From the IMG/VR virus record IMGVR_UViG_3300044957_000763, positions 248,001 through 312,000 of that record: a DNA stretch of 64,000 nt; one strand, 5' to 3'. The stretch's first letter is position 1. Each line of letters starts with the position of its first letter. Made by a program: the position numbers and the translations under genes. This document shows positions 6,291-17,501 of the stretch, piece by piece. The notes under the pieces are model-generated. The model was not told the DNA's origin, made no database searches, and was given only the letters and a program-made list of their open reading frames with translations.

Positions 6291-7646
6291 CCGTTCCTGT
6301 AAATCTACAAAAATCTACAAGTTTAAGTTTCAATCAGCTAAACCTATTGCTCGTCGCCGTTAGGCGACGTAGGCTTGTCTTAATGGATTGACAACTACTG
6401 GCGTTGCGGCAACGCTCCTATCCCATTCACAGCTGAAGGCTGTGTTTGGGAATACTTTTCGTCCTATGTTTGCACTGCCGTTGGCATCTGCATTAAGCAG
6501 CGCGCCTTCGGCACTGCGATACAAGCCTCGTTCTATACGAGTTCCAGAGAATGATTGTTCATTTTTCTGTCCTTTCTCCCAGACAGGGATTTCATCCCTA
6601 TCCAAGAACGATGCTTGACTTGTGTATGATTCTTCAGTAAAGATAACATCAATTCCCAAGGCGTTAGCCTTGTACTGAATTTTCTGCAACAAGTTACAGA
6701 AAGGAACAGATTGGAAGTTTTGATTAGTTTTCTTTCCTAGTTTTATCCCTGTTTTCCATCCATCGTTTTTTCCAATAACGATTGTTCCGATATTGTGCTT
6801 CGCACAATTCTCGATAATCATTTTGCTGACGTGATGGAAGTAATTTTCCAGTCTGAAGTATCTCTTTCGAGATGTTTTCTTACTGATATTTTTGTTGTAC
6901 CAGCGATTGAAACTCTTTACTATACGACCGTTGATAAGTATTGGACTATGCTTATCTGAAGTTATCGTTGCTAGATTATTCAATCCTATGTCAATGCAAC
7001 AAAAATTGTTCTTGTTGGCTCTCGCTTTCGGCAGAGCCTTCTGTTCGTATTGGACTTCGACCATAAAACCGAAGGTTTTTGGTGTAGCCACTACTTGTTT
7101 GAACGGTTTATCTGATTTGATGCTAAAGCATCCATTTGTTGGAGTTAGGAAATCCAACGGTTTTCCGCTTTGTCCTCCTTTAATAGTTTCATTATAGAAA
7201 ATGACTTGAGCTAGTTTCTTTTTATAATGCGGGGGCTTAGGACATCCAAGGAATTTGGATTTATCTTTTTTGTAAGCAGAGAGCGCCTTTCGATAATTAC
7301 TCCAATCCGTCAATACCTGACGGATTGTCTGCTTCGCCGTCTTTGTATTGTGTAGATTTTTGAAACAGTCTAGATGTTGAGTTTCTTTAATTAGAATACT
7401 AATATCTGGAAGTCTTTCTTTCTCAAACCAAGCCTTTCTCATGAGAAAATTGCATCTGTTGTAGAGTTCTTTGCTCATGCTTGCCAGTCTGAGCAATTCT
7501 TTCGTTGCTTTGATATGATGTCTTTCTACCACAATCACATAGTATATTTAAGGACATACCCTATCTTCACCTTATTGATTTATGAAGAAAGTAGAAATTG
7601 TTAGATATTCCTAGATTTTTGTAGATTTTTCAGAACAGTTTCGCAA
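6291..7646 (-). mobile_element. non-autonomous tnpB-only element with IS607-like ends
   Basis: GG at both junctions; perfect 17-bp inverted repeat at 6301-6317 and 7612-7628; removing the element restores the HNH C-terminus. Confidence 0.7.
6360..7538 (-). CDS. tnpB: TnpB RNA-guided endonuclease (rearranged RuvC-II type, no Zn finger)
   Basis: CIDIGLNNLAT, IGKNDGWK, EESYTSQASFLD, NADANGSANI. Confidence 0.9.
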   Translation of the reverse strand: MIVVERHHIKATKELLRLASMSKELYNRCNFLMRKAWFEKERLPDISILIKETQHLDCFKNLHNTKTAKQTIRQVLTDWSNYRKALSAYKKDKSKFLGCPKPPHYKKKLAQVIFYNETIKGGQSGKPLDFLTPTNGCFSIKSDKPFKQVVATPKTFGFMVEVQYEQKALPKARANKNNFCCIDIGLNNLATITSDKHSPILINGRIVKSFNRWYNKNISKKTSRKRYFRLENYFHHVSKMIIENCAKHNIGTIVIGKNDGWKTGIKLGKKTNQNFQSVPFCNLLQKIQYKANALGIDVIFTEESYTSQASFLDRDEIPVWEKGQKNEQSFSGTRIERGLYRSAEGALLNADANGSANIGRKVFPNTAFSCEWDRSVAATPVVVNPLRQAYVA

Positions 7647-8408
7647 CCCTTTAGGTGGCTTCTCTACACCCAGCCGCCGACACCATTTGTGAATGGCTGA
7701 ATCTGATACCCCAAGGTCGACGGCCAGTTGAGTCAATGGCTTAGACCATACGAGGGCCTTGAGCTCTTCCGCTGTTGGATGAGGAACTTTGTGACGAGAG
7801 GGACGGGGATTGGTGCGCCAGGTGGCACATTTGGCGCAATGTTTGAGCCTGCTATTAAATTGTGCATTACAATTTGGACATACTTTTTTGGGTTTGGCAT
7901 GAGCACAATTTCTTCCAGCAAATGTATCCGTTTGTGTATGGCAATGTGGGCACAAGATGCGCAAATTTTCAATACGGTTGTCGTTATTGTTGCCGTTAAT
8001 ATGGTCAAGCTGAAGAACCAGTGGCTTGTTGTTCCACACAGGTTTTTGCCCGCACTCTTCGCAAATGTCCAATTTTAGGCCAGCACTAATGAGTTTTCGC
8101 TTGAGGTCGCGACCATTGATGCCTGGGCCATTCAAAACTAAATATTCATTTAGGTTCCGACCAGTTTTCCATCCAGCTTTCTCGCCACTAGAGTATTGCT
8201 TAATGTGCGAATCATCAATGTTGTCTTGTTGAATTCTTGCTTTGAGAGTTCGTGAATAATACCCTCGATGGTCAAATCCCCAATAGTCCAATACTTCTGT
8301 ATATGTTTTTGATTTTAACACCAAAGCCTCAAAATCTATGACCGGCATTGTCCAAATTGGATTTCTTTTTCTTCTTGGCTTGATATTAGCAGAACAATTT
8401 TTCATCAT
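7611..8408 (-). CDS. HNH homing endonuclease
   Basis: CEECG...LQLDHINGNNNDNRIENLRILCPHCH; starts about 30 nt downstream of the tRNA cluster. Confidence 0.9.
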   Translation of the reverse strand: MMKNCSANIKPRRKRNPIWTMPVIDFEALVLKSKTYTEVLDYWGFDHRGYYSRTLKARIQQDNIDDSHIKQYSSGEKAGWKTGRNLNEYLVLNGPGINGRDLKRKLISAGLKLDICEECGQKPVWNNKPLVLQLDHINGNNNDNRIENLRILCPHCHTQTDTFAGRNCAHAKPKKVCPNCNAQFNSRLKHCAKCATWRTNPRPSRHKVPHPTAEELKALVWSKPLTQLAVDLGVSDSAIHKWCRRLGVEKPPKGLRNCSEKSTKI

Positions 8409-8438: not shown

Positions 8439-8513
8439 TGGCTCCCCGAGGAGGATTCGAACCGCCTTCTGGACGTTCAAAGCGTCCTATCCTAGCCAAT
8501 AGACGACCGGGGA
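8439..8513 (-). tRNA. tRNA-Gln(TTG)
   Basis: acceptor TCCCCGG/TCGGGGA, anticodon arm GGACG-CTTTGAA-CGTCC, TTCGAAT loop, encoded CCA. Confidence 0.92.
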
Positions 8514-8516
8514 GTA

Positions 8517-8591
8517 TGGCACCCAACCAAGGATTCGAACCTCGCTCTCGTGGTCCAGGGCCACGCGTCACTACCGCTAGACTAGTTGGGT
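8517..8591 (-). tRNA. tRNA-Gln(CTG) with C33
   Basis: acceptor ACCCAAC/GTTGGGT, anticodon arm CGTGG-CCCTGGA-CCACG, encoded CCA. Confidence 0.9.
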
Positions 8592-8594
8592 GTT

Positions 8595-8687
8595 TGGCTG
8601 CCGCTCCAGGGCTCGAACCTGGAAATCCATTCTGCATGGTCTTCTCGTTCAAAGCGAGAGATGTTCCCTAAATTACACTAAGCGGCA
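8595..8687 (-). tRNA. tRNA with TTG (Gln) anticodon and a 20-nt variable region
   Basis: acceptor TGCCGCT/AGCGGCA, arm TCTCG-CTTTGAA-CGAGA, variable AGACCATGCAGAATGGATTT, T-arm CCAGG-TTCGAGC-CCTGG, G73-CCA. Confidence 0.88.
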
Positions 8688-9036: not shown

Positions 9037-9735
9037 TTATGCTCCATGAACAGAGAAGCTGGACAGTGTGTATGCCACTGCGATTCCAACAATCATTGAC
9101 AGAATATTAATTTCTCGTCGGTTGCTTTTGTGTGTTTCTGGAATCATGTCAGCGGCCAGAATATAAATCAGTGTTCCGCACACGAATGCTGTTAGTGTGT
9201 CTGTTGCGATTGGAAGACCGATTGTGCCTGCTCCGAATCCCATCAGTGTTGCCACGATAATCAATCCAAACCATTCATAGATTACTTTGGTTGGCATTTT
9301 GTGTGTGAGCGCCAGTGCGACTAGTGCAATGCCGTCAATGGCTCGGTGCACACTGAGACCAATCAGTGCGTCTCTGACGTTACTGCTAGACAGAGAATAG
9401 ATGGCAAGACCGTCTAGTATTGCGTGCACAATAAAGCCAGTTACAAGTAACTTGGAGATTCCTTTGTGTTGTTCGTTGCTGCAATTGTGTTCGTCATGAG
9501 GACACATTGCCAAGCACGACGACAGCAAAAAATACAGACCAAATCCGACAACAACGGCAAATCCATTTGCGTGTGCCGATTCGTTTTGCATGATTTCTGG
9601 AATCAAATGCGTAAAAATGGTTGTGAGCAGTAGTCCGGCTCCGAACGGAATCAACCATTTCTTGATTTCCTTATTGTGTGCGAGGATGATTCCAAGTACT
9701 GGCGTGGTGATTGCGAATAGTATTAATCCGAGCAT
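9037..9735 (-). CDS. ZIP-family (ZupT-like) metal transporter
   Basis: multiple TM segments; HAILDG and HRAIDG metal-site helices; His-rich loop. Confidence 0.85.
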   Translation of the reverse strand: MLGLILFAITTPVLGIILAHNKEIKKWLIPFGAGLLLTTIFTHLIPEIMQNESAHANGFAVVVGFGLYFLLSSCLAMCPHDEHNCSNEQHKGISKLLVTGFIVHAILDGLAIYSLSSSNVRDALIGLSVHRAIDGIALVALALTHKMPTKVIYEWFGLIIVATLMGFGAGTIGLPIATDTLTAFVCGTLIYILAADMIPETHKSNRREINILSMIVGIAVAYTLSSFSVHGA

Positions 9736-10436
9736 TTGTTTTTTACCAATTGTGTTTTGTTCCAGTTATCGTCGCTTTTGAACCATGGTGCTACCATTTT
9801 ATATCTTCCTGTGCACCATTGTCCATCGCCGCTTTTCAAGTATACCCCTTCTCTGGCTTGATTTTGTGCATACAAACTTGGGCCATCGCGCATTTCCAAT
9901 AATGTTTTTGGCGTACACGTTCCACTGTGGATAACGCCAATCGTTGAGAACCCTGCTTCTCTAAGTAATTTCAAAGCCAGTGTTGGGTCAAGGAATTTTC
10001 GCTCATCAGAGTGATAGATGTCGTATGCCACAAACCAATCAGGCAATTCATTATATGCGATTGTGTGTTTTGCGAAAAGCCATTCGCCGTAAATACTGAT
10101 TTGGCCACCAGTGGCTTTGGACACACTTCTGATTTTATCAGCGTTCTCATATAGCCAAGTCCAAACCCTGGAGAACTGCTGTTGTGCTGGTGTTTTGCGT
10201 GCTGAATACCCTTTGCGCAGAATATGGCTGCGATTGCGGACTATTGGTTCGCCTTTGTGTATGGAAATACCCATGTTCGCACCGTCGATTTTCTCTTGAA
10301 TGCTGATTTCTCCGGCCAGAAACATTTCCATATCGCAGATAGTAGCTACACGGTCGTCGCTATCGGCATTGGGTTCCAACGGCAAGTGCATTGTCCGTGG
10401 GAATTCTGGCAATATTCTTTTCTCGATTTCGTACAT
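9723..10436 (-). CDS. ATP-dependent RNA ligase (Rnl2-like)
   Basis: nucleotidyltransferase motifs EKIDGAN, IYGEW, FVAYDI, REGVYLK, KMV. Confidence 0.85.
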   Translation of the reverse strand: MYEIEKRILPEFPRTMHLPLEPNADSDDRVATICDMEMFLAGEISIQEKIDGANMGISIHKGEPIVRNRSHILRKGYSARKTPAQQQFSRVWTWLYENADKIRSVSKATGGQISIYGEWLFAKHTIAYNELPDWFVAYDIYHSDERKFLDPTLALKLLREAGFSTIGVIHSGTCTPKTLLEMRDGPSLYAQNQAREGVYLKSGDGQWCTGRYKMVAPWFKSDDNWNKTQLVKNKCSD

Positions 10437-11198: not shown

Positions 11199-12011
11199 CT
11201 ATCCCATTGCTTCCATTTCTTTCTTGAATGCTCGGTTTGCGGCACTCGAGAATATGCCAATGTAGATTGACATAAATGCGATTTCAGCAAAGATAAACAC
11301 CATTGCCAGGATTTTGCCAGGTATTGTGATGGGGAACAGGTCTCCGTACCCGGTGGTTGATGCGGTGACAACTGAATACCAAAAGCCATCGAACACCCTG
11401 ACATATTTGTCTGGTTGTGCAAACTTTTCTATTTCGTAAATCAGCGCCCCAAACAAGGCAATAATACCAAGGTTGAATGCAAAGATTTGACCAATCATTT
11501 GTTTGCCTTTCCAGATTTCTGTGATAAGTTGTTGCGCTTTGGGGCTGTATCGGTAGAATTTCAAAACGCTAACAATCCTCATAGCGCGAACTGCCCCCAG
11601 CCACGAAGCTGGTACAAAAAACCCTAACCAAAATGGCAATATAGACATCAGGTCAATGATTGCGGTGAGTTTTCGCGGCCACATGCGCGGATTACTACTG
11701 TTTTTCCATCGCACGAAGTATTCAATGGTGAAGACACACGCGATAAACCTTTCCACCCACAAGAAGAATATAGGTGACTCTAGTGAGTGTGCAGTGCGAT
11801 ATACGTCAGTTTCAACAACATAGCATCCTAATCTGACAAACACTAGCACCAGGATGAATCGTTCAATCCACCAGCTTAATGGTTGTCCGCGCATGCTTCT
11901 GGCAAGTGCGCCTATGGGCGCAAGTGTAAGGTCGCTTACGACATTTCCAACTGTTTGAATGCCGCCTACGATTCCTAATGGTTCCGTCGAATCATCTATG
12001 ATTTTAGGCAT
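11199..12011 (-). CDS. potassium channel (6TM, voltage-gated type)
   Basis: selectivity filter TTGYGD; S4-like RAMRIVSVLKFYRY. Confidence 0.9.
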   Translation of the reverse strand: MPKIIDDSTEPLGIVGGIQTVGNVVSDLTLAPIGALARSMRGQPLSWWIERFILVLVFVRLGCYVVETDVYRTAHSLESPIFFLWVERFIACVFTIEYFVRWKNSSNPRMWPRKLTAIIDLMSILPFWLGFFVPASWLGAVRAMRIVSVLKFYRYSPKAQQLITEIWKGKQMIGQIFAFNLGIIALFGALIYEIEKFAQPDKYVRVFDGFWYSVVTASTTGYGDLFPITIPGKILAMVFIFAEIAFMSIYIGIFSSAANRAFKKEMEAMG

Positions 12012-12678
12012 TGTTTTTATCCTCGAGTTGGGTCAACCTGGTCATGAACCGGTCGATTCCAATTGCAAATCCTATTCCTTCGGCATAGGCCCCACCGCCA
12101 ACGATTTGACCTTGTGCGCCCATGTCTGGGATTGAGATTTCAAAACCGTTTCCTGTATAGTATGACAGACCACGAGATGCCGCTGAATCAATCACCAGAA
12201 TGTTTTCTGGCACAAATGCGACCAGCATGCTTTTGGCCATTGCAATCATCTCATCAATGTAGTCTTTTCTAGGATTAAGTACCTCTACTCCGAATTGAGA
12301 AAACTCTCGGTATCGTCCGTCTTGAGGTTGTTCATAGCGCCAGCATCGGACGTCGTAGAACATTTTAACGTCCTTGTCAAAGCGATATTGTTGAGCAATC
12401 AACTGACACGTTGCCGTGCCCTCTGGTCTTAGACACAATGCGCGACCTTTCTTGTCTGGGAATCGGTACATTTGTCTTTCGACCAATTCCGGTCCCACTT
12501 TATCCAGGTACACTTCTTCTTTCTCGATTGAAGGAAGGATGATTTCTTTGTATCCGTATCCCAGTGCAATATCTGCCCAAGTATTGACAATCTTTCGCCT
12601 AAGCTCTGCTGTTGAACCGTACAGTATACGAGTGCCCTTGACTTGTTTTTCGCCTAGTTTGATTTCTCCATCTATCAT
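12004..12678 (-). CDS. histidyl-tRNA synthetase catalytic core only (about 224 aa)
   Basis: KGTR, LRPEGTA, RYEQPQDGRYREFSQFGVE, RGLSYYTG, GGG, GFAIGIDR; no anticodon-binding domain. Confidence 0.8.
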   Translation of the reverse strand: MIDGEIKLGEKQVKGTRILYGSTAELRRKIVNTWADIALGYGYKEIILPSIEKEEVYLDKVGPELVERQMYRFPDKKGRALCLRPEGTATCQLIAQQYRFDKDVKMFYDVRCWRYEQPQDGRYREFSQFGVEVLNPRKDYIDEMIAMAKSMLVAFVPENILVIDSAASRGLSYYTGNGFEISIPDMGAQGQIVGGGAYAEGIGFAIGIDRFMTRLTQLEDKNNA

Positions 12679-12760
12679 TGCGGTACCACTTGCGTTTTCA
12701 TGCGCTTTGTGCGATAATACCATACGTAAGGCAAAAAATGCCACGGAGAAAAAATCAAGA

Positions 12761-13331
12761 ATGTCGTATTTCAGTAAAATTTGGAACAGGTGGTTCGGTC
12801 GCAAATCGTCTGGTTCTGTTTCGTCTCAATCAACAACAGTTTCTACATCATCTAATGTGGATACGCTAAATGTAAGCACATCGCCCTCGAGTCCACAAAC
12901 CAATAGCAAAATACGCACTGCGTCACGAGGTCAAAGTGGTGCAGGTTATAGCGGCGAATCATCCGCTTCATACGTTGACCCTGCAACTGTAATCATGGTT
13001 GCTAATAATTACAGTGACCCTAGTCCAGCGCACACAGAAGAACAGCGAGTGTCTTCCGGCGAACCTTCACCCTATCTTGCGCCATATGAGGCCCATGAAC
13101 AATACTATCATGACTCGTCCGGTTCGTCACATCGAAATAGTGACAACAGTAGTCATGATTCCAGCTATGGCCATCACGAGTCAAAGCTATAGCCATCACG
13201 ATTCTGGTAGCAGCTATCACGAGTCAAGCTATAGCCATCACGATTCTGGTAGCAGCCATCACGATTCTGGCAGTAGTTATAGCTCAGACTCTGGCGGTGG
13301 TTGTGACGGTGGCGGTGGCGGTGGCGACTAA
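12761..13331 (+). pseudogene. Ser/His/Gly-rich low-complexity protein with an apparent 1-nt frameshift at 13183-13185
   Basis: track ORFs 12416 and 12999 join if one A is removed; the repeat copy at 13218-13256 has AA where this copy has AAA. Confidence 0.65.
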
Positions 13332-15821: not shown

Positions 15822-17501
15822 CTACATACTGTCTGGCATAGAAACCCCAAGGATGCCACCAACCAGAGACAGTGTTTGCTTTGTTAATTGCACAATTTGC
15901 AATCGGGCATAAGTTTGTTCCGGTTCGTTTTCTTGGATAACTTTACAGTTTTCATAGAATTCGTGAAACATCTTTGATAGCTCTACGGCAAAGTGCGCCA
16001 ATTGATGAACACTGCATGTCTCGGCGCATTTGTGAACCTCATCATTTAGCGATAGACACTTGACAATCAGCTTGTTTTCTTGAATGGTCAACTTGTGATT
16101 CCAGTCAAATTCAACATGCTGCGACGGTGCTTTGGCCAAGATTGACGCACATCGCGCATGGGCATACTTGACATAGAAACAAGGGTTGTCTTGCGCTTGC
16201 TTAACTGCAAGTCCTATATCAAAGTCCATGTGCTTGCTGGCAGAAACATACAGGTAGAAGAATCGCACCACGTCTTTTGCAGTGTCGAAATCTGACCCAA
16301 GTTCTTGCGCAACCTCGTTAATCAAATCAACCAGGGTATACAAGTTGCCATCTCGCTTTCGCATTAACACAGGCTGACCTTCTTTGATAAATCGCACAGC
16401 CTGGAAAATCACAACATTGAGCGATTCTGGGTTATGACCAAGTGCAGCCACACCTGCCTTTAATCGCGGAATGTAACCATGATGGTCTGGTCCAAACAAG
16501 TCAACCACATGCTGGTTACCTCGAGCGTATTTGTCGTGATGATAACTGATGTCACTTGCGGCATATGTCATTCGTCCGTCTGACCGCACTAGAACTCGGT
16601 CGTCGGAATCTCCGTACTGTTTGGTCAATAACCACGTTGCGCCATCAATTTTTGCAGATTGGCCACTGTCTTGAAGGTGTTGTAATGTGACACCCACCTT
16701 ACCAGACTCAATCATCGCCTGCTCACTGACCCACATGTCGAACTCAACTCCGAACTGAGCGAGTTCTTGTTTCTGATTGTCAATCATCATTTGTTGTGAG
16801 GTTGATTGATACCAATTCGTGTCGGCGTTTATTAAGTGCGCCGCATCGTACATTGATACCAGCACACTTGCAATGCCCTCAACGTATTCTCCTTTGTATC
16901 CATTTTCAGGCATGTCGTAAGACATACCAAGTAAATTGAACACATGGTGCTTCACGCTTTCGGAAAACAGTCGCATTTGCTCGCTGTTGACACCATCATT
17001 GATGTAATACTCTCGTGTCACATTGTGACCAATCATAGTCAAGACTCGAGACAGCACATCACCAATAGCAGCGCCTCGGGCAGCGGCTACCGTAATCGGT
17101 CCGTTTGGGTTGACCGAAACATACTCAACACTATAGCTCTCAGGTTGTTTGGTGCTTGATATTGTTTCCCCACCAAGTGCGCTTTGTGTTGCGTGTTGCA
17201 ATAGTGTCGTGTCTACTTTGACGTTGAGAAACCCTGGCTTAGACCATATAAACGTCAAACCCTGCTCTTCAAGACCGGCGAAGCCTTTGGTCTGGTTAAT
17301 TGCATGGAACACACCATAACTGTCGGTGCCAGAGATTTTAGCTGCCCGCATACAAAATGTTGTGGTGTAATCATATTCTATATTAGATGCTGATGGCTGA
17401 AGGTCTATTGGAATAGACAACAACGAATCATGCAACAATCCTGCAATCACAGTCTGTTCGACGGCGTGTTCAATATGTTTTTCAATATCCAGTTGCAACA
17501 T
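15822..17501 (-). CDS. argS: arginyl-tRNA synthetase with a degenerate HIGH motif
   Basis: VEYVSVNPNGP, REYYIND, RSDGRMTYAASD, FGPDHHGY, NPCFYVKYAHAR; 559 aa. Confidence 0.92.
   Translation of the reverse strand: MLQLDIEKHIEHAVEQTVIAGLLHDSLLSIPIDLQPSASNIEYDYTTTFCMRAAKISGTDSYGVFHAINQTKGFAGLEEQGLTFIWSKPGFLNVKVDTTLLQHATQSALGGETISSTKQPESYSVEYVSVNPNGPITVAAARGAAIGDVLSRVLTMIGHNVTREYYINDGVNSEQMRLFSESVKHHVFNLLGMSYDMPENGYKGEYVEGIASVLVSMYDAAHLINADTNWYQSTSQQMMIDNQKQELAQFGVEFDMWVSEQAMIESGKVGVTLQHLQDSGQSAKIDGATWLLTKQYGDSDDRVLVRSDGRMTYAASDISYHHDKYARGNQHVVDLFGPDHHGYIPRLKAGVAALGHNPESLNVVIFQAVRFIKEGQPVLMRKRDGNLYTLVDLINEVAQELGSDFDTAKDVVRFFYLYVSASKHMDFDIGLAVKQAQDNPCFYVKYAHARCASILAKAPSQHVEFDWNHKLTIQENKLIVKCLSLNDEVHKCAETCSVHQLAHFAVELSKMFHEFYENCKVIQENEPEQTYARLQIVQLTKQTLSLVGGILGVSMPDSM

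What the first reader, a model, noticed from the sequence alone, without database searches (positions are those of the whole stretch)
8595..8687. tRNA with a Gln anticodon but a class II long variable arm
Seen: a 93-nt tRNA with anticodon TTG, a 20-nt variable region containing a CCAT-GCAGA-ATGG hairpin, G73 and U1-A72. Established: bacterial tRNA-Gln has a short variable loop; a long arm plus G73 are principal SerRS identity elements, and SerRS ignores the anticodon. Inference: it may insert Ser at CAA codons (mistranslation or recoding), or be a nuclease-resistant or decoy tRNA-Gln.
Basis: partly seen in the sequence, partly recalled or inferred. Interest (0 to 1): 0.68.

Follow-up and report, generated by a model that had tools for sequence, protein, structure and literature searches.

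The report
Phage glutamine tRNA with long arm
A giant lake-water phage encodes a real glutamine tRNA carrying the extra hairpin arm normally reserved for Ser/Leu/Tyr tRNAs; it belongs to a recurrent, almost virus-only tRNA type that I could not find described, and it most likely still carries glutamine rather than serine.

Summary
Window 8595-8687 (-) is a 93-nt tRNA with anticodon UUG, U1-A72, G73, encoded CCA and a 20-nt variable region with a CCAU/AUGG hairpin (Rfam tRNA 45.8 bits). It heads a three-gene operon with two canonical 75-nt tRNA-Gln genes, in a complete 479-kb phage with 62 tRNAs.

It is not a one-off. Pattern scans of viral contigs recovered 36 distinct long-arm tRNA-Gln genes (24 UUG, 12 CUG), and U1 is kept in 35 of 36. 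The 15-48 tertiary pair covaries (A-U 28, G-C 6), and V hairpins beat shuffles in 19 of 36. The discriminator varies (G/A/U).

The same strict pattern hit 11 viral tRNA arrays. In 185,579 prokaryotic genomes it hit only 2 tRNAs, both in phage-like arrays.

With the V-arm removed, the body is most like Gln and among the least like Ser, Leu or Tyr. Two carrier phages encode GlnRS, one right beside the Gln tRNA cluster.

The serine-insertion reading is therefore not supported. CAA is the phage's main Gln codon (2.5% of all codons). Best reading: a Gln-accepting, structurally distinct second decoder. Escape from tRNA-targeting nucleases is the likeliest purpose of the arm, but that is inferred. 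No RNA or charging data exist.

The parts
8595..8687 (-). Long-arm tRNA-Gln(UUG), 93 nt including encoded CCA (8595-8597). First gene of a three-tRNA operon.
   Evidence: ARAGORN; Rfam tRNA 45.8 bits; MFE cloverleaf
8650..8652 (-). Anticodon UUG (reads CAA/CAG), in the 7-nt loop CUUUGAA closed by G31-C39. No alternative register is possible.
   Evidence: Sequence
8623..8642 (-). 20-nt variable region AGA-CCAU-GCAGA-AUGG-AUUU. Stem strands are 8636-8639 and 8627-8630, loop 8631-8635. The last nucleotide (U, 8623) pairs with A15 as the Levitt pair.
   Evidence: Homologue L219 keeps the flanks AGACC / GGAUUU but has a stem 2 bp shorter, a compensated indel.
8517..8591 (-). Canonical 75-nt tRNA-Gln(CUG): A1-U72, G73, CCA, 4-nt V loop. 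Lies 3 nt downstream of the long-arm gene.
   Evidence: (48.4 bits)
8439..8513 (-). Canonical 75-nt tRNA-Gln(UUG): U1-A72, G73, CCA. Same anticodon as the long-arm gene.
   Evidence: (44.8 bits)
9723..10436 (-). Context only: RNA ligase gene 1 kb upstream of the tRNA operon. May act in tRNA repair.
   Evidence: Pfam PF09414, E 7.7e-26; PHROG RNA ligase families

Best explanation
This is a functional, phage-encoded glutamine tRNA whose short variable loop has been replaced by a class II-like hairpin arm. It belongs to an old, almost virus-specific lineage of long-arm tRNA-Gln genes (UUG and CUG). These usually sit beside canonical tRNA-Gln genes in phage tRNA arrays. It is probably transcribed with its two canonical neighbours and folds into a normal L-shape with the extra arm protruding from the core. 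It is probably charged through the glutamine system: host or phage GlnRS, or non-discriminating GluRS plus amidotransferase. From general knowledge, these class I enzymes bind the D-arm side of the tRNA, leaving the variable region towards solvent. It would then decode CAA/CAG as Gln. The arm gives the phage a second decoder of the same codons with a different shape. The most likely purpose, by inference only, is that a host tRNA-targeting nuclease or inhibitor that reads the tRNA body cannot disable both versions. Shown: the gene, its fold, the family, its virus restriction, its Gln-type body and acceptor end, and selection on the arm and on the tertiary pair. Inferred: Gln charging, use in translation, and the anti-defence role.
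For: It is a real tRNA. The family has 36 distinct genes in viral contigs, 24 UUG and 12 CUG. On the 38-sequence alignment, 94.4% of helix cells pair against 58% in shuffles and about 44% with slid partners, with 288 double-sided changes; the 15-48 pair is A-U 28, G-C 6, with no single-sided changes. V-region MFE averages -3.18 against -0.76 kcal/mol for shuffles, and 19 of 36 reach p<=0.05. Gln features: U1 in 35 of 36; the target's U1-A72, G73, G2-C71, G10, U11-A24, U35 and G36 match the neighbouring canonical Gln tRNAs and the Gln rules (PMC9976931). The body is nearest to Gln. Two carrier phages encode true GlnRS (TIGR00440, 611 and 585 bits), one abutting the Gln tRNA cluster. Virus restriction: the strict pattern gives 11 viral hits, all in tRNA arrays, against 2 tRNAs among 32 hits in 596 Gb of prokaryotic genomes. 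Long-arm genes are not recent copies of their neighbours: same-phage identity is 0.42, no higher than between phages, and the nearest relative is another long-arm gene for 27 of 37. 16 of 35 fetched stretches also hold a canonical Gln gene. CAA is the major Gln codon. Context: an RNA ligase lies 1 kb away. Defence nucleases that cut tRNA variable loops, and phage tRNAs that evade tRNA-targeting defences, are published (PMC13096335 and PMC11555353, abstracts).
Against: There is no expression, maturation or aminoacylation data. All holders found are DNA metagenomes, and they are 100% identical at the locus, so they give no population signal. The target itself has G73, G2-C71 and a long arm, which are the elements SerRS uses, so some serylation cannot be excluded. 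C3-G70 and A38 differ from the E. coli GlnRS set (from memory). The host and its Gln-charging route are unknown, and this phage has no GlnRS/GluRS or GatB. The target's own V hairpin is only marginal on its own (4 bp, p=0.05). The anticodon loop and T-loop of family members were fixed by my search pattern and cannot count as conservation. The anti-nuclease role has no direct support. Both Gln(UUG) genes here have identical anticodon loops, so the arm would only help against enzymes that read the tRNA body.
Confidence: 0.55

Rival explanations
1. Serine-accepting tRNA. SerRS recognises the long arm plus G73 and ignores the anticodon, so CAA is partly read as Ser (mistranslation or recoding).
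For: The long arm, G73 and G2-C71 (no C2-G71 antideterminant) are present. [quoted passage not shown] There is precedent: nematode V-arm tRNAs with Gly/Ile anticodons are charged with Leu (PMC3333845).
Against: The body is least like Ser, whereas nev-tRNAs derive from a class II body. The target has U11-A24 and U1-A72, not the C11-G24 seen in most phage tRNA-Ser here. The arm is shorter (4 bp) with more unpaired 3' bases than in the phage tRNA-Ser sampled here (5.2 bp and 1.0 nt on average). In the family N73 is A or U in about 20 of 36, also among the target's closest homologues, while U1 is kept. Both Gln anticodons occur. A canonical tRNA-Gln(UUG) lies in the same operon and CAA makes up 2.5% of all codons. 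CAA aligns with E/D/Q/R, not S, in ArgRS (low power). The genome has no SerRS.
Confidence: 0.1
2. Non-translational decoy: a tRNA-shaped RNA that soaks up a host tRNA-Gln-directed nuclease, toxin or modification enzyme (or serves another non-ribosomal use) and is not used in decoding.
For: It duplicates the anticodon of an adjacent canonical gene. Many phages pair canonical and long-arm versions. Some published irregular tRNAs are charged but not used in translation (PMC5389517).
Against: All features needed for charging and for EF-Tu and ribosome use are kept across the family: a fully paired 7/5 acceptor/T branch, encoded CCA in many members, and the Levitt pair. Some phage stretches show only long-arm Gln genes (L183). 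A decoy for an anticodon-loop reader would not need an arm.
Confidence: 0.12
3. Near-neutral structural drift. Phage tRNAs are under relaxed constraint and the variable region tolerates insertions, so the arm has no function of its own.
For: V-regions vary in length (14-21 nt) and sequence, and some do not fold. Other class I isotypes in viral arrays also show expansions, about 12 of 220 in unselected loci, and many tRNA-Leu have lost their arm.
Against: Hairpins are far more frequent than in shuffles (19 of 36 at p<=0.05). There are compensated stem changes (target against L219). Long-arm genes cluster with each other rather than with their neighbours. The type persists across phages from 42 kb to 543 kb and is almost absent from cellular genomes.
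Confidence: 0.18
4. The extra segment is an intron-like insert removed during maturation, giving an ordinary 73-75-nt tRNA-Gln.
For: None direct. An RNA ligase gene lies 1 kb away.
Against: The insert is in the variable region, not at the canonical 37/38 intron site, and it forms a plain hairpin rather than a bulge-helix-bulge. The genome has no splicing endonuclease. At 20 nt it is far too short for a group I intron. The last insert nucleotide covaries with position 15 as a tertiary pair, so it belongs to the mature fold.
Confidence: 0.03

Closest known systems
Canonical bacterial and phage tRNA-Gln (class I, 4-5-nt variable loop)
   Same: UUG anticodon in a CUUUGAA loop, U1-A72, G73, G2-C71, G10, U11-A24, a 7/5 acceptor/T branch, and a D-arm GUGU...ACAU typical of the phage Gln tRNAs sampled here.
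   Different: A 20-nt variable region with a hairpin in place of 4-5 nt. C3-G70 and A38 differ from the E. coli GlnRS set (from memory).
Class II tRNAs (tRNA-Ser, tRNA-Leu, bacterial tRNA-Tyr)
   Same: A long variable arm closed by a stable loop, with a single nucleotide 48 pairing with 15.
   Different: Gln anticodon and a Gln-type body. The target has U11-A24 where the phage tRNA-Ser sampled here are mostly C11-G24. The arm averages 4.1 bp with 2.5 unpaired 3' nt, against 5.2 bp and 1.0 for phage tRNA-Ser. Body identity to Ser, Leu and Tyr is the lowest of all isotypes.
Nematode nev-tRNAs and eukaryotic noncanonical V-arm tRNAs (Hamashima et al., PMC3333845, PMC4300185)
   Same: A V-arm combined with an anticodon of a class I amino acid. 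The genes are conserved, yet no mistranslation was detected in vivo.
   Different: nev-tRNAs derive from tRNA-Leu and are charged with Leu. The phage tRNA derives from tRNA-Gln and keeps the Gln acceptor features. The organisms differ too (animals against phages).
allo-tRNAs and irregular tRNAs of bacteria and phages (Mukai et al. 2017, PMC5389517)
   Same: Unusual tRNAs with long V-arms and non-Ser anticodons, some found in phage tRNA clusters.
   Different: allo-tRNAs have 8/4 or 9/3 acceptor/T branches and Sec-like D-arms with presumed Ser identity. This tRNA is 7/5 with an ordinary D-arm.
Phage tRNAs that evade tRNA-targeting defences (PMC11555353; Septu cutting the tRNA-Tyr variable loop, PMC13096335)
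   Same: Phage-encoded duplicates of host-type decoders whose altered structure could avoid a defence nuclease. An RNA ligase lies nearby.
   Different: As I recall the published cases, those tRNAs escape through small sequence changes. Here a whole arm is added, and no matching defence system is known.

Membership tests
tRNA (Rfam RF00005, canonical 7/5 cloverleaf) | Covariance-model score above the gathering threshold over the full model | tested here: met
   45.8 bits against 29, model positions 1-71
tRNA (Rfam RF00005, canonical 7/5 cloverleaf) | 7-bp acceptor stem, 5-bp T-stem, U33, T-loop UUCGA, G18G19, and a 15-48 tertiary pair | tested here: met
   A15-U48 in the target, covarying in the family.
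tRNA-Gln (glutamine identity) | Weak first pair U1-A72, which also marks tRNA-Gln for GluRS2 and the indirect pathway | tested here: met
   U1-A72 in the target. U1 in 35 of 36 family members. Rule from PMC9976931.
tRNA-Gln (glutamine identity) | Anticodon U35 and G36 with a Gln wobble base | tested here: met
   UUG. The family has only UUG and CUG, but the search patterns fixed this.
tRNA-Gln (glutamine identity) | Acceptor-stem and discriminator set of E. coli: G73, G2-C71, G3-C70 | tested here: inconclusive
   G73 and G2-C71 are present. Position 3-70 is C-G, not G-C. The host's own rules are unknown.
tRNA-Gln (glutamine identity) | The 10-25 pair with G10 | tested here: met
   G10 pairs with U25 as G.U. 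G10 occurs in most family members.
tRNA-Gln (glutamine identity) | Aminoacylation with Gln (directly, or via Glu and amidation) | not testable with these tools
   Needs biochemistry. Indirect support: GlnRS genes in two carrier phages.
tRNA-Ser (SerRS substrate) | Long extra arm of sufficient size | tested here: inconclusive
   The 20-nt region has a 4-bp stem. The phage tRNA-Ser sampled here average 5.2 bp with 1.0 unpaired 3' nt; the target has 4 unpaired 3' nt in the MFE.
tRNA-Ser (SerRS substrate) | G73, conserved | tested here: not met
   The target has G73, but so do the canonical Gln neighbours. Across the family N73 is roughly G 16, A 15, U 5 (my tally of the rows).
tRNA-Ser (SerRS substrate) | Ser-type body (C11-G24, acceptor-stem elements, overall tRNA-Ser tertiary design) | tested here: not met
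   U11-A24 as in 27 of 31 canonical Gln tRNAs, against C11-G24 in 23 of 38 Ser. Mean body identity to Ser is 0.39, the lowest group.
allo-tRNA / tRNA-Sec-like | 8/4 or 9/3 acceptor/T branch and a long D-stem with a tetraloop | tested here: not met
   7/5 branch, 4-bp D-stem and 10-nt D-loop
nev-tRNA-type (class II body with a class I anticodon) | Body phylogenetically derived from tRNA-Leu or tRNA-Ser | tested here: not met
   The nearest bodies are Gln. Mean identity to Leu is 0.43 and to Ser 0.39.
Intron-containing tRNA | Insert at the 37/38 site or a bulge-helix-bulge motif, plus a splicing enzyme | tested here: not met
   The insert lies in the V region as a plain hairpin. PF01974 is absent from the genome.

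The most novel reading that the evidence does not exclude
Phages systematically switch the class of their tRNAs. They add a hairpin arm to class I tRNAs (Gln, Ile, Cys, Asn, Glu, Thr, Met and others) and remove it from tRNA-Leu. That would create a shadow set of decoders with altered shape, one that host body-reading tRNA nucleases or inhibitors cannot recognise, or that phage enzymes such as phage GlnRS can single out. The long-arm tRNA-Gln would be the clearest member of a general, undescribed viral counter-defence or orthogonalisation strategy in translation.
Probability: 0.25. Interest if true: 0.85.

Novelty: new variant of a known kind. Interest (0 to 1): 0.64.

Why it matters
Textbook tRNA biology reserves the long variable arm for Leu, Ser, bacterial Tyr and Sec, where it serves as an identity or shape mark. 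A conserved, virus-restricted lineage of glutamine tRNAs with such an arm breaks that rule. Similar expansions occur in other class I tRNAs, and many tRNA-Leu in the same phage arrays have lost the arm. So phages seem to explore tRNA architectures that cells avoid. If the arm shields the tRNA from host tRNA-targeting immunity, it is a new kind of counter-defence. If it changes which synthetase acts on the tRNA, it gives natural orthogonal tRNA scaffolds for genetic-code engineering. It also matters for annotation. ARAGORN skipped at least one apparent member (L213), and any annotation rule that reads a long arm as a sign of Ser/Leu/Tyr would be misled.

Tried and rejected
- Annotated phage collection (blastn, distant mode, 4 kb around the locus): only a 130-nt HNH match, so no relatives.
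- Synteny search with the neighbouring RNA ligase: one distant locus at 36% identity, not informative.
- Sequencing runs: 12 lake or sediment DNA metagenomes and no RNA run. Laid contigs are 100% identical, so they give no population variation and no maturation evidence. The only by-product was a partial long-arm Gln(CUG) homologue on another organism's contig.
- ArgRS codon test for CAA recoding: consistent with Gln, but only 22 CAA sites and poorly conserved columns, so low power.
- Sigma-70 promoter and terminator scan: nothing on the tRNA strand. This is uninformative for a phage of unknown host.
- PDB sequence search for the RNA ligase: no hit.
- D-loop comparison (nucleotides after G18G19) as a Ser-versus-Gln discriminator: too noisy, because ARAGORN varies between 3- and 4-bp D-stems. 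I used only the 11-24 pair from it.
- Eight literature searches found no description of long-arm tRNA-Gln or of V-arm-bearing class I tRNAs in phages. The library lacks most subscription journals, so this is not proof of novelty.
- I did not run the large protein searches, structure prediction or complex prediction, because the question concerns an RNA.
- Rejected readings: a tRNA-Ser(UGA) read in a shifted register (the loop is closed by G31-C39, so the register is fixed), allo-tRNA, and intron.

Full report
**1.
ARAGORN finds three tandem tRNA genes on the minus strand:
- 8595-8687: anticodon TTG, 93 nt.
- 8517-8591: CTG, 75 nt.
- 8439-8513: TTG, 75 nt.

Rfam's tRNA model matches all three over its full length, at 45.8, 48.4 and 44.8 bits against a gathering score of 29. 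For the first gene it places an 18-nt insertion in the variable region.

The structure of the 93-nt gene has these parts:
- a 7-bp acceptor stem with U1-A72, G2-C71 and C3-G70, then G73 and encoded CCA;
- a 4-bp D-stem (GUGU/ACAU) with a 10-nt loop;
- an anticodon stem UCUCG/CGAGA closing the loop CUUUGAA;
- a 20-nt variable region AGA-CCAU-GCAGA-AUGG-AUUU;
- a T-arm CCAGG-UUCGAGC-CCUGG.

The thermodynamic MFE of the whole RNA is this five-arm cloverleaf. The anticodon register is fixed by the G31-C39 closing pair, so this is not a tRNA-Ser(UGA) read out of register. Every detail in the finding is correct.

**2. Where it lies.**
The window is bases 248001-312000 of a single 478,840-bp viral record with direct terminal repeats, rated 100% complete. 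GC content is 44.5%. The genome carries 62-63 tRNA genes, a tmRNA and two suppressor-type tRNAs, so it is a huge phage. It occurs, 100% identical at this locus, in several lake-water metagenomes.

Genes around the tRNA-Gln operon:
- an HNH endonuclease and a TnpB downstream;
- a ZIP transporter, an RNA ligase (PF09414), a K+ channel, a HisRS-like N-terminal piece, an AAA protein and a full ArgRS upstream.

The genome has no GlnRS/GluRS catalytic domain, no GatB and no credible SerRS (18.6 bits, below the cut-off). Charging must therefore rely on the host.

The standard code fits. Frames of 200 aa or more cover 73% of the genome and all three stop codons are used.

**3. It is not unique in its genome.**
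The same phage carries other tRNAs of non-canonical class:
- tRNA(UAU), 94 nt, with a long arm;
- tRNA-Thr(GGU), 86 nt, with a small V hairpin;
- tRNA-Thr(UGU), 83 nt;
- two tRNA-Leu of 77-78 nt that lack the long arm.

**4. It is one of a family.**
I scanned the viral contig collection with a loose pattern: CTTTGAA, then 22-34 nt, then GGTTCGANNCC. This requires a UUG anticodon loop and a variable region of 14 nt or more. After ARAGORN filtering it gave 21 further tRNA-Gln(UUG) genes of 84-92 nt.

A loose end of a lake contig showed a homologue with anticodon CUG. I therefore ran the CUG version of the pattern, which gave 13 long-arm tRNA-Gln(CUG) genes.

In all there are 36 distinct genes, 24 UUG and 12 CUG. 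They come from records of 42 kb to 543 kb. Some phages have long-arm versions of both anticodons (L164, L183, L278). In 16 of 35 fetched stretches a canonical tRNA-Gln lies nearby, often adjacent.

**5. The family is under structural selection.**
On the 38-sequence alignment, 94.4% of helix cells form standard pairs, against 58% in shuffles and about 44% with slid partners. There are 288 double-sided changes.

The tertiary 15-48 pair links D-loop position 15 to the last nucleotide of the variable region. It is A-U in 28 sequences and G-C in 6, with no single-sided change. The insert is therefore part of a normal L-shaped core.

The V-regions (14-21 nt) have unrelated sequences but fold better than their shuffles. 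Mean MFE is -3.18 against -0.76 kcal/mol, and 19 of 36 reach p<=0.05 where about 2 are expected. Many are capped by GNRA-type loops.

The target's closest homologue, L219 (CUG), shares its D-arm, T-loop, G73 and the V flanks AGACC / GGAUUU. Its stem is 2 bp shorter: CC-GAGAA-GG against CCAU-GCAGA-AUGG. That is a compensated change. On its own the target's hairpin is only marginal (p=0.05).

One caution applies. The anticodon loop and T-loop were fixed by my patterns and do not count as conservation.

**6. It is a viral feature.**
A stricter pattern adds a TTGG D-loop anchor and uses the CUG anticodon, so tRNA-Ser cannot be confused with it.
- In the viral collection it gives 11 hits, all inside tRNA arrays. 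ARAGORN of them tRNA-Gln.
- In 185,579 prokaryotic species genomes (596 Gb) it gives 32 hits, and only 2 are tRNAs. Both lie in multi-tRNA arrays of Planctomycetota MAGs.

**7. Which amino acid?**
I removed the V-region and anticodon and compared 57 structural positions with 454 tRNAs from the phage and the fetched loci. The target is closest to Gln (best 0.68, mean 0.51). It is among the farthest from Ser (0.39), Leu (0.43) and Tyr (0.32). Part of the Gln set was pattern-selected, but unselected canonical Gln tRNAs also rank at the top.

The target's G73 and U1-A72 are shared by its canonical neighbours. Its U11-A24 matches 27 of 31 canonical Gln tRNAs, whereas Ser is mostly C11-G24.

Across the family U1 is kept in 35 of 36, while N73 is G, A or U. 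That holds among the target's near homologues too.

According to the identity review (PMC9976931):
- Glutamine identity lies in the anticodon, the acceptor stem with N73, and the 10-25 pair. U1-A72 marks tRNA-Gln in the indirect pathway.
- Serine identity rests mainly on arm size, with G73 and acceptor elements adding to it.

The family pattern fits Gln, not Ser. Two carrier phages encode a true GlnRS (TIGR00440, 611 and 585 bits, cut-off 426). In one of them the gene abuts the Gln tRNA cluster that holds the long-arm gene.

From general knowledge, class I GlnRS and GluRS approach tRNA from the D-arm side and leave the variable region towards solvent. An added arm should therefore be tolerated.

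CAA is the phage's preferred Gln codon, at 24.6 against 11.4 per 1000 for CAG. Ser insertion would hit 2.5% of all codons. In ArgRS, CAA sites align with E, D, Q and R in five bacterial homologues (low power).

I cannot exclude some serylation of this particular member, since it has G73, G2-C71 and a long arm.

**8. What the arm is for.**
This part is inference. Long-arm genes are not recent copies of their canonical neighbours. Same-phage identity is 0.42, no higher than between phages, and the nearest relative is another long-arm gene for 27 of 37. The type is therefore old and maintained.

It usually accompanies a canonical decoder of the same codons. Other isotypes show the same trend. In unselected viral loci about 12 of 220 class I tRNAs carry a true arm (Ile, Cys, Met, Asn, Asp, Glu), and 30 of 71 tRNA-Leu across all sampled loci are short.

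Defence systems that cleave tRNAs, including in the variable loop, are published, as are phage tRNAs that evade such systems (PMC13096335 and PMC11555353, abstracts). An RNA ligase also sits 1 kb from this operon.

My preferred reading is a shape-variant back-up decoder that a body-reading nuclease or inhibitor cannot recognise. The alternatives are a decoy, selective use by phage enzymes, or near-neutral drift.

An intron-like insert is unlikely. It is in the wrong position, it has no bulge-helix-bulge, the genome has no splicing endonuclease, and its last base takes part in a covarying tertiary pair.

**9. Comparison with known systems.**
- Nematode nev-tRNAs also combine a V-arm with class I anticodons, but they derive from tRNA-Leu and accept Leu (PMC3333845). 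They cause no detectable mistranslation in vivo (PMC4300185).
- allo-tRNAs have 8/4 or 9/3 branches (PMC5389517).

The phage tRNA is neither. It is a 7/5 tRNA-Gln that acquired an arm. Eight full-text searches found no description of such tRNAs, but the library is incomplete.

**10. Verdict.**
- The Ser-insertion interpretation is not supported.
- The nuclease-resistance idea stays open and is plausible.
- The tRNA is a new structural variant of a known kind, and part of a wider class-switching pattern in phage tRNA arrays that deserves experimental work.
- Interest: 0.64.

Noticed in passing
G000:C1:205077-205170 (-), outside the window; also L033 and L179: A 94-nt tRNA with anticodon UAU (AUA codon), A73 and a long V-arm whose loop CAGAUUA/CAGAUAA is kept in two other phages (92-95 nt). 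It parallels the nematode nev-tRNA-Ile(UAU), which is charged with Leu. Its identity (Ile or Leu) is open.
   Followed up: partly
G000:C1:217174-217250 and 217524-217601 (-), outside the window: tRNA-Leu(CAA) of 77 nt and tRNA-Leu(CAG) of 78 nt with 5-6-nt variable loops, that is class I-like leucine tRNAs. 30 of 71 distinct tRNA-Leu in the sampled viral loci are short.
   Followed up: partly
G000:C1:206179-206264 and 207295-207377 (-), outside the window: tRNA-Thr(GGU) of 86 nt with a 3-bp V hairpin and tRNA-Thr(UGU) of 83 nt with an 11-nt V loop, each beside a canonical 76-nt copy. Expanded Thr, Asn, Glu, Ile, Cys and Met tRNAs recur in other phage arrays.
   Followed up: partly
G000:C1:157728-157803 (+) and 233368-233442 (+), outside the window: Suppressor-type tRNAs with anticodons CUA and UCA in a genome whose ORFs fit the standard code and use all three stop codons. 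I did not examine whether they act late or at specific genes.
   Followed up: no
G000:C1:144131-144485 (+), outside the window: Phage-encoded tmRNA with the predicted tag ANNNFALAV.
   Followed up: no
window 6360-7538 (-) and 7611-8408 (-): A TnpB-family RNA-guided endonuclease gene (NF040570, 116 bits) and an HNH endonuclease lie directly downstream of the tRNA-Gln operon. Mobile elements may shuffle tRNA genes here.
   Followed up: no
window 12004-12804 (-) and 15822-17501 (-): A 266-aa protein matching only the N-terminal catalytic part of HisRS/HisZ (below the equivalog cut-off), and a full-length ArgRS (TIGR00456, 302 bits). Among five bacteria tested, the ArgRS is closest to the proteobacterial enzymes (34-35% identity).
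   Followed up: partly
L006 8584-8669 and 10351-10436; about 17 other viral loci (L017, L019, L022 and others): A nearly identical 86-88-nt element (starting GCGAGCGTAGTTCAACGG) that ARAGORN calls tRNA-Lys(UUU) with a long variable region. It recurs in 40-60-kb viral contigs, twice in L006. The anticodon assignment looks doubtful.
   Followed up: no
L213 2970-3066 (-): A 97-nt gap in a 35-tRNA array matches the long-arm Gln(CUG) pattern, but ARAGORN calls no gene there. Long-arm class I tRNAs are probably under-called by standard finders.
   Followed up: no
L269 709-2313 (-) with L025; L268 907-2490 (-): Phage-encoded GlnRS genes (534 and 527 aa). In L269/L025 the gene abuts a cluster of four tRNA-Gln genes that includes a long-arm one. 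This may be a co-evolved enzyme-tRNA pair.
   Followed up: partly
G000:C1:319134-319203 (+), outside the window: A 70-nt ARAGORN 'tRNA-Gln(UUG)' without CCA and with G instead of U at position 33. It is probably a tRNA pseudogene or fragment, and its D-arm (GUGU...ACAC) resembles that of the long-arm gene.
   Followed up: no
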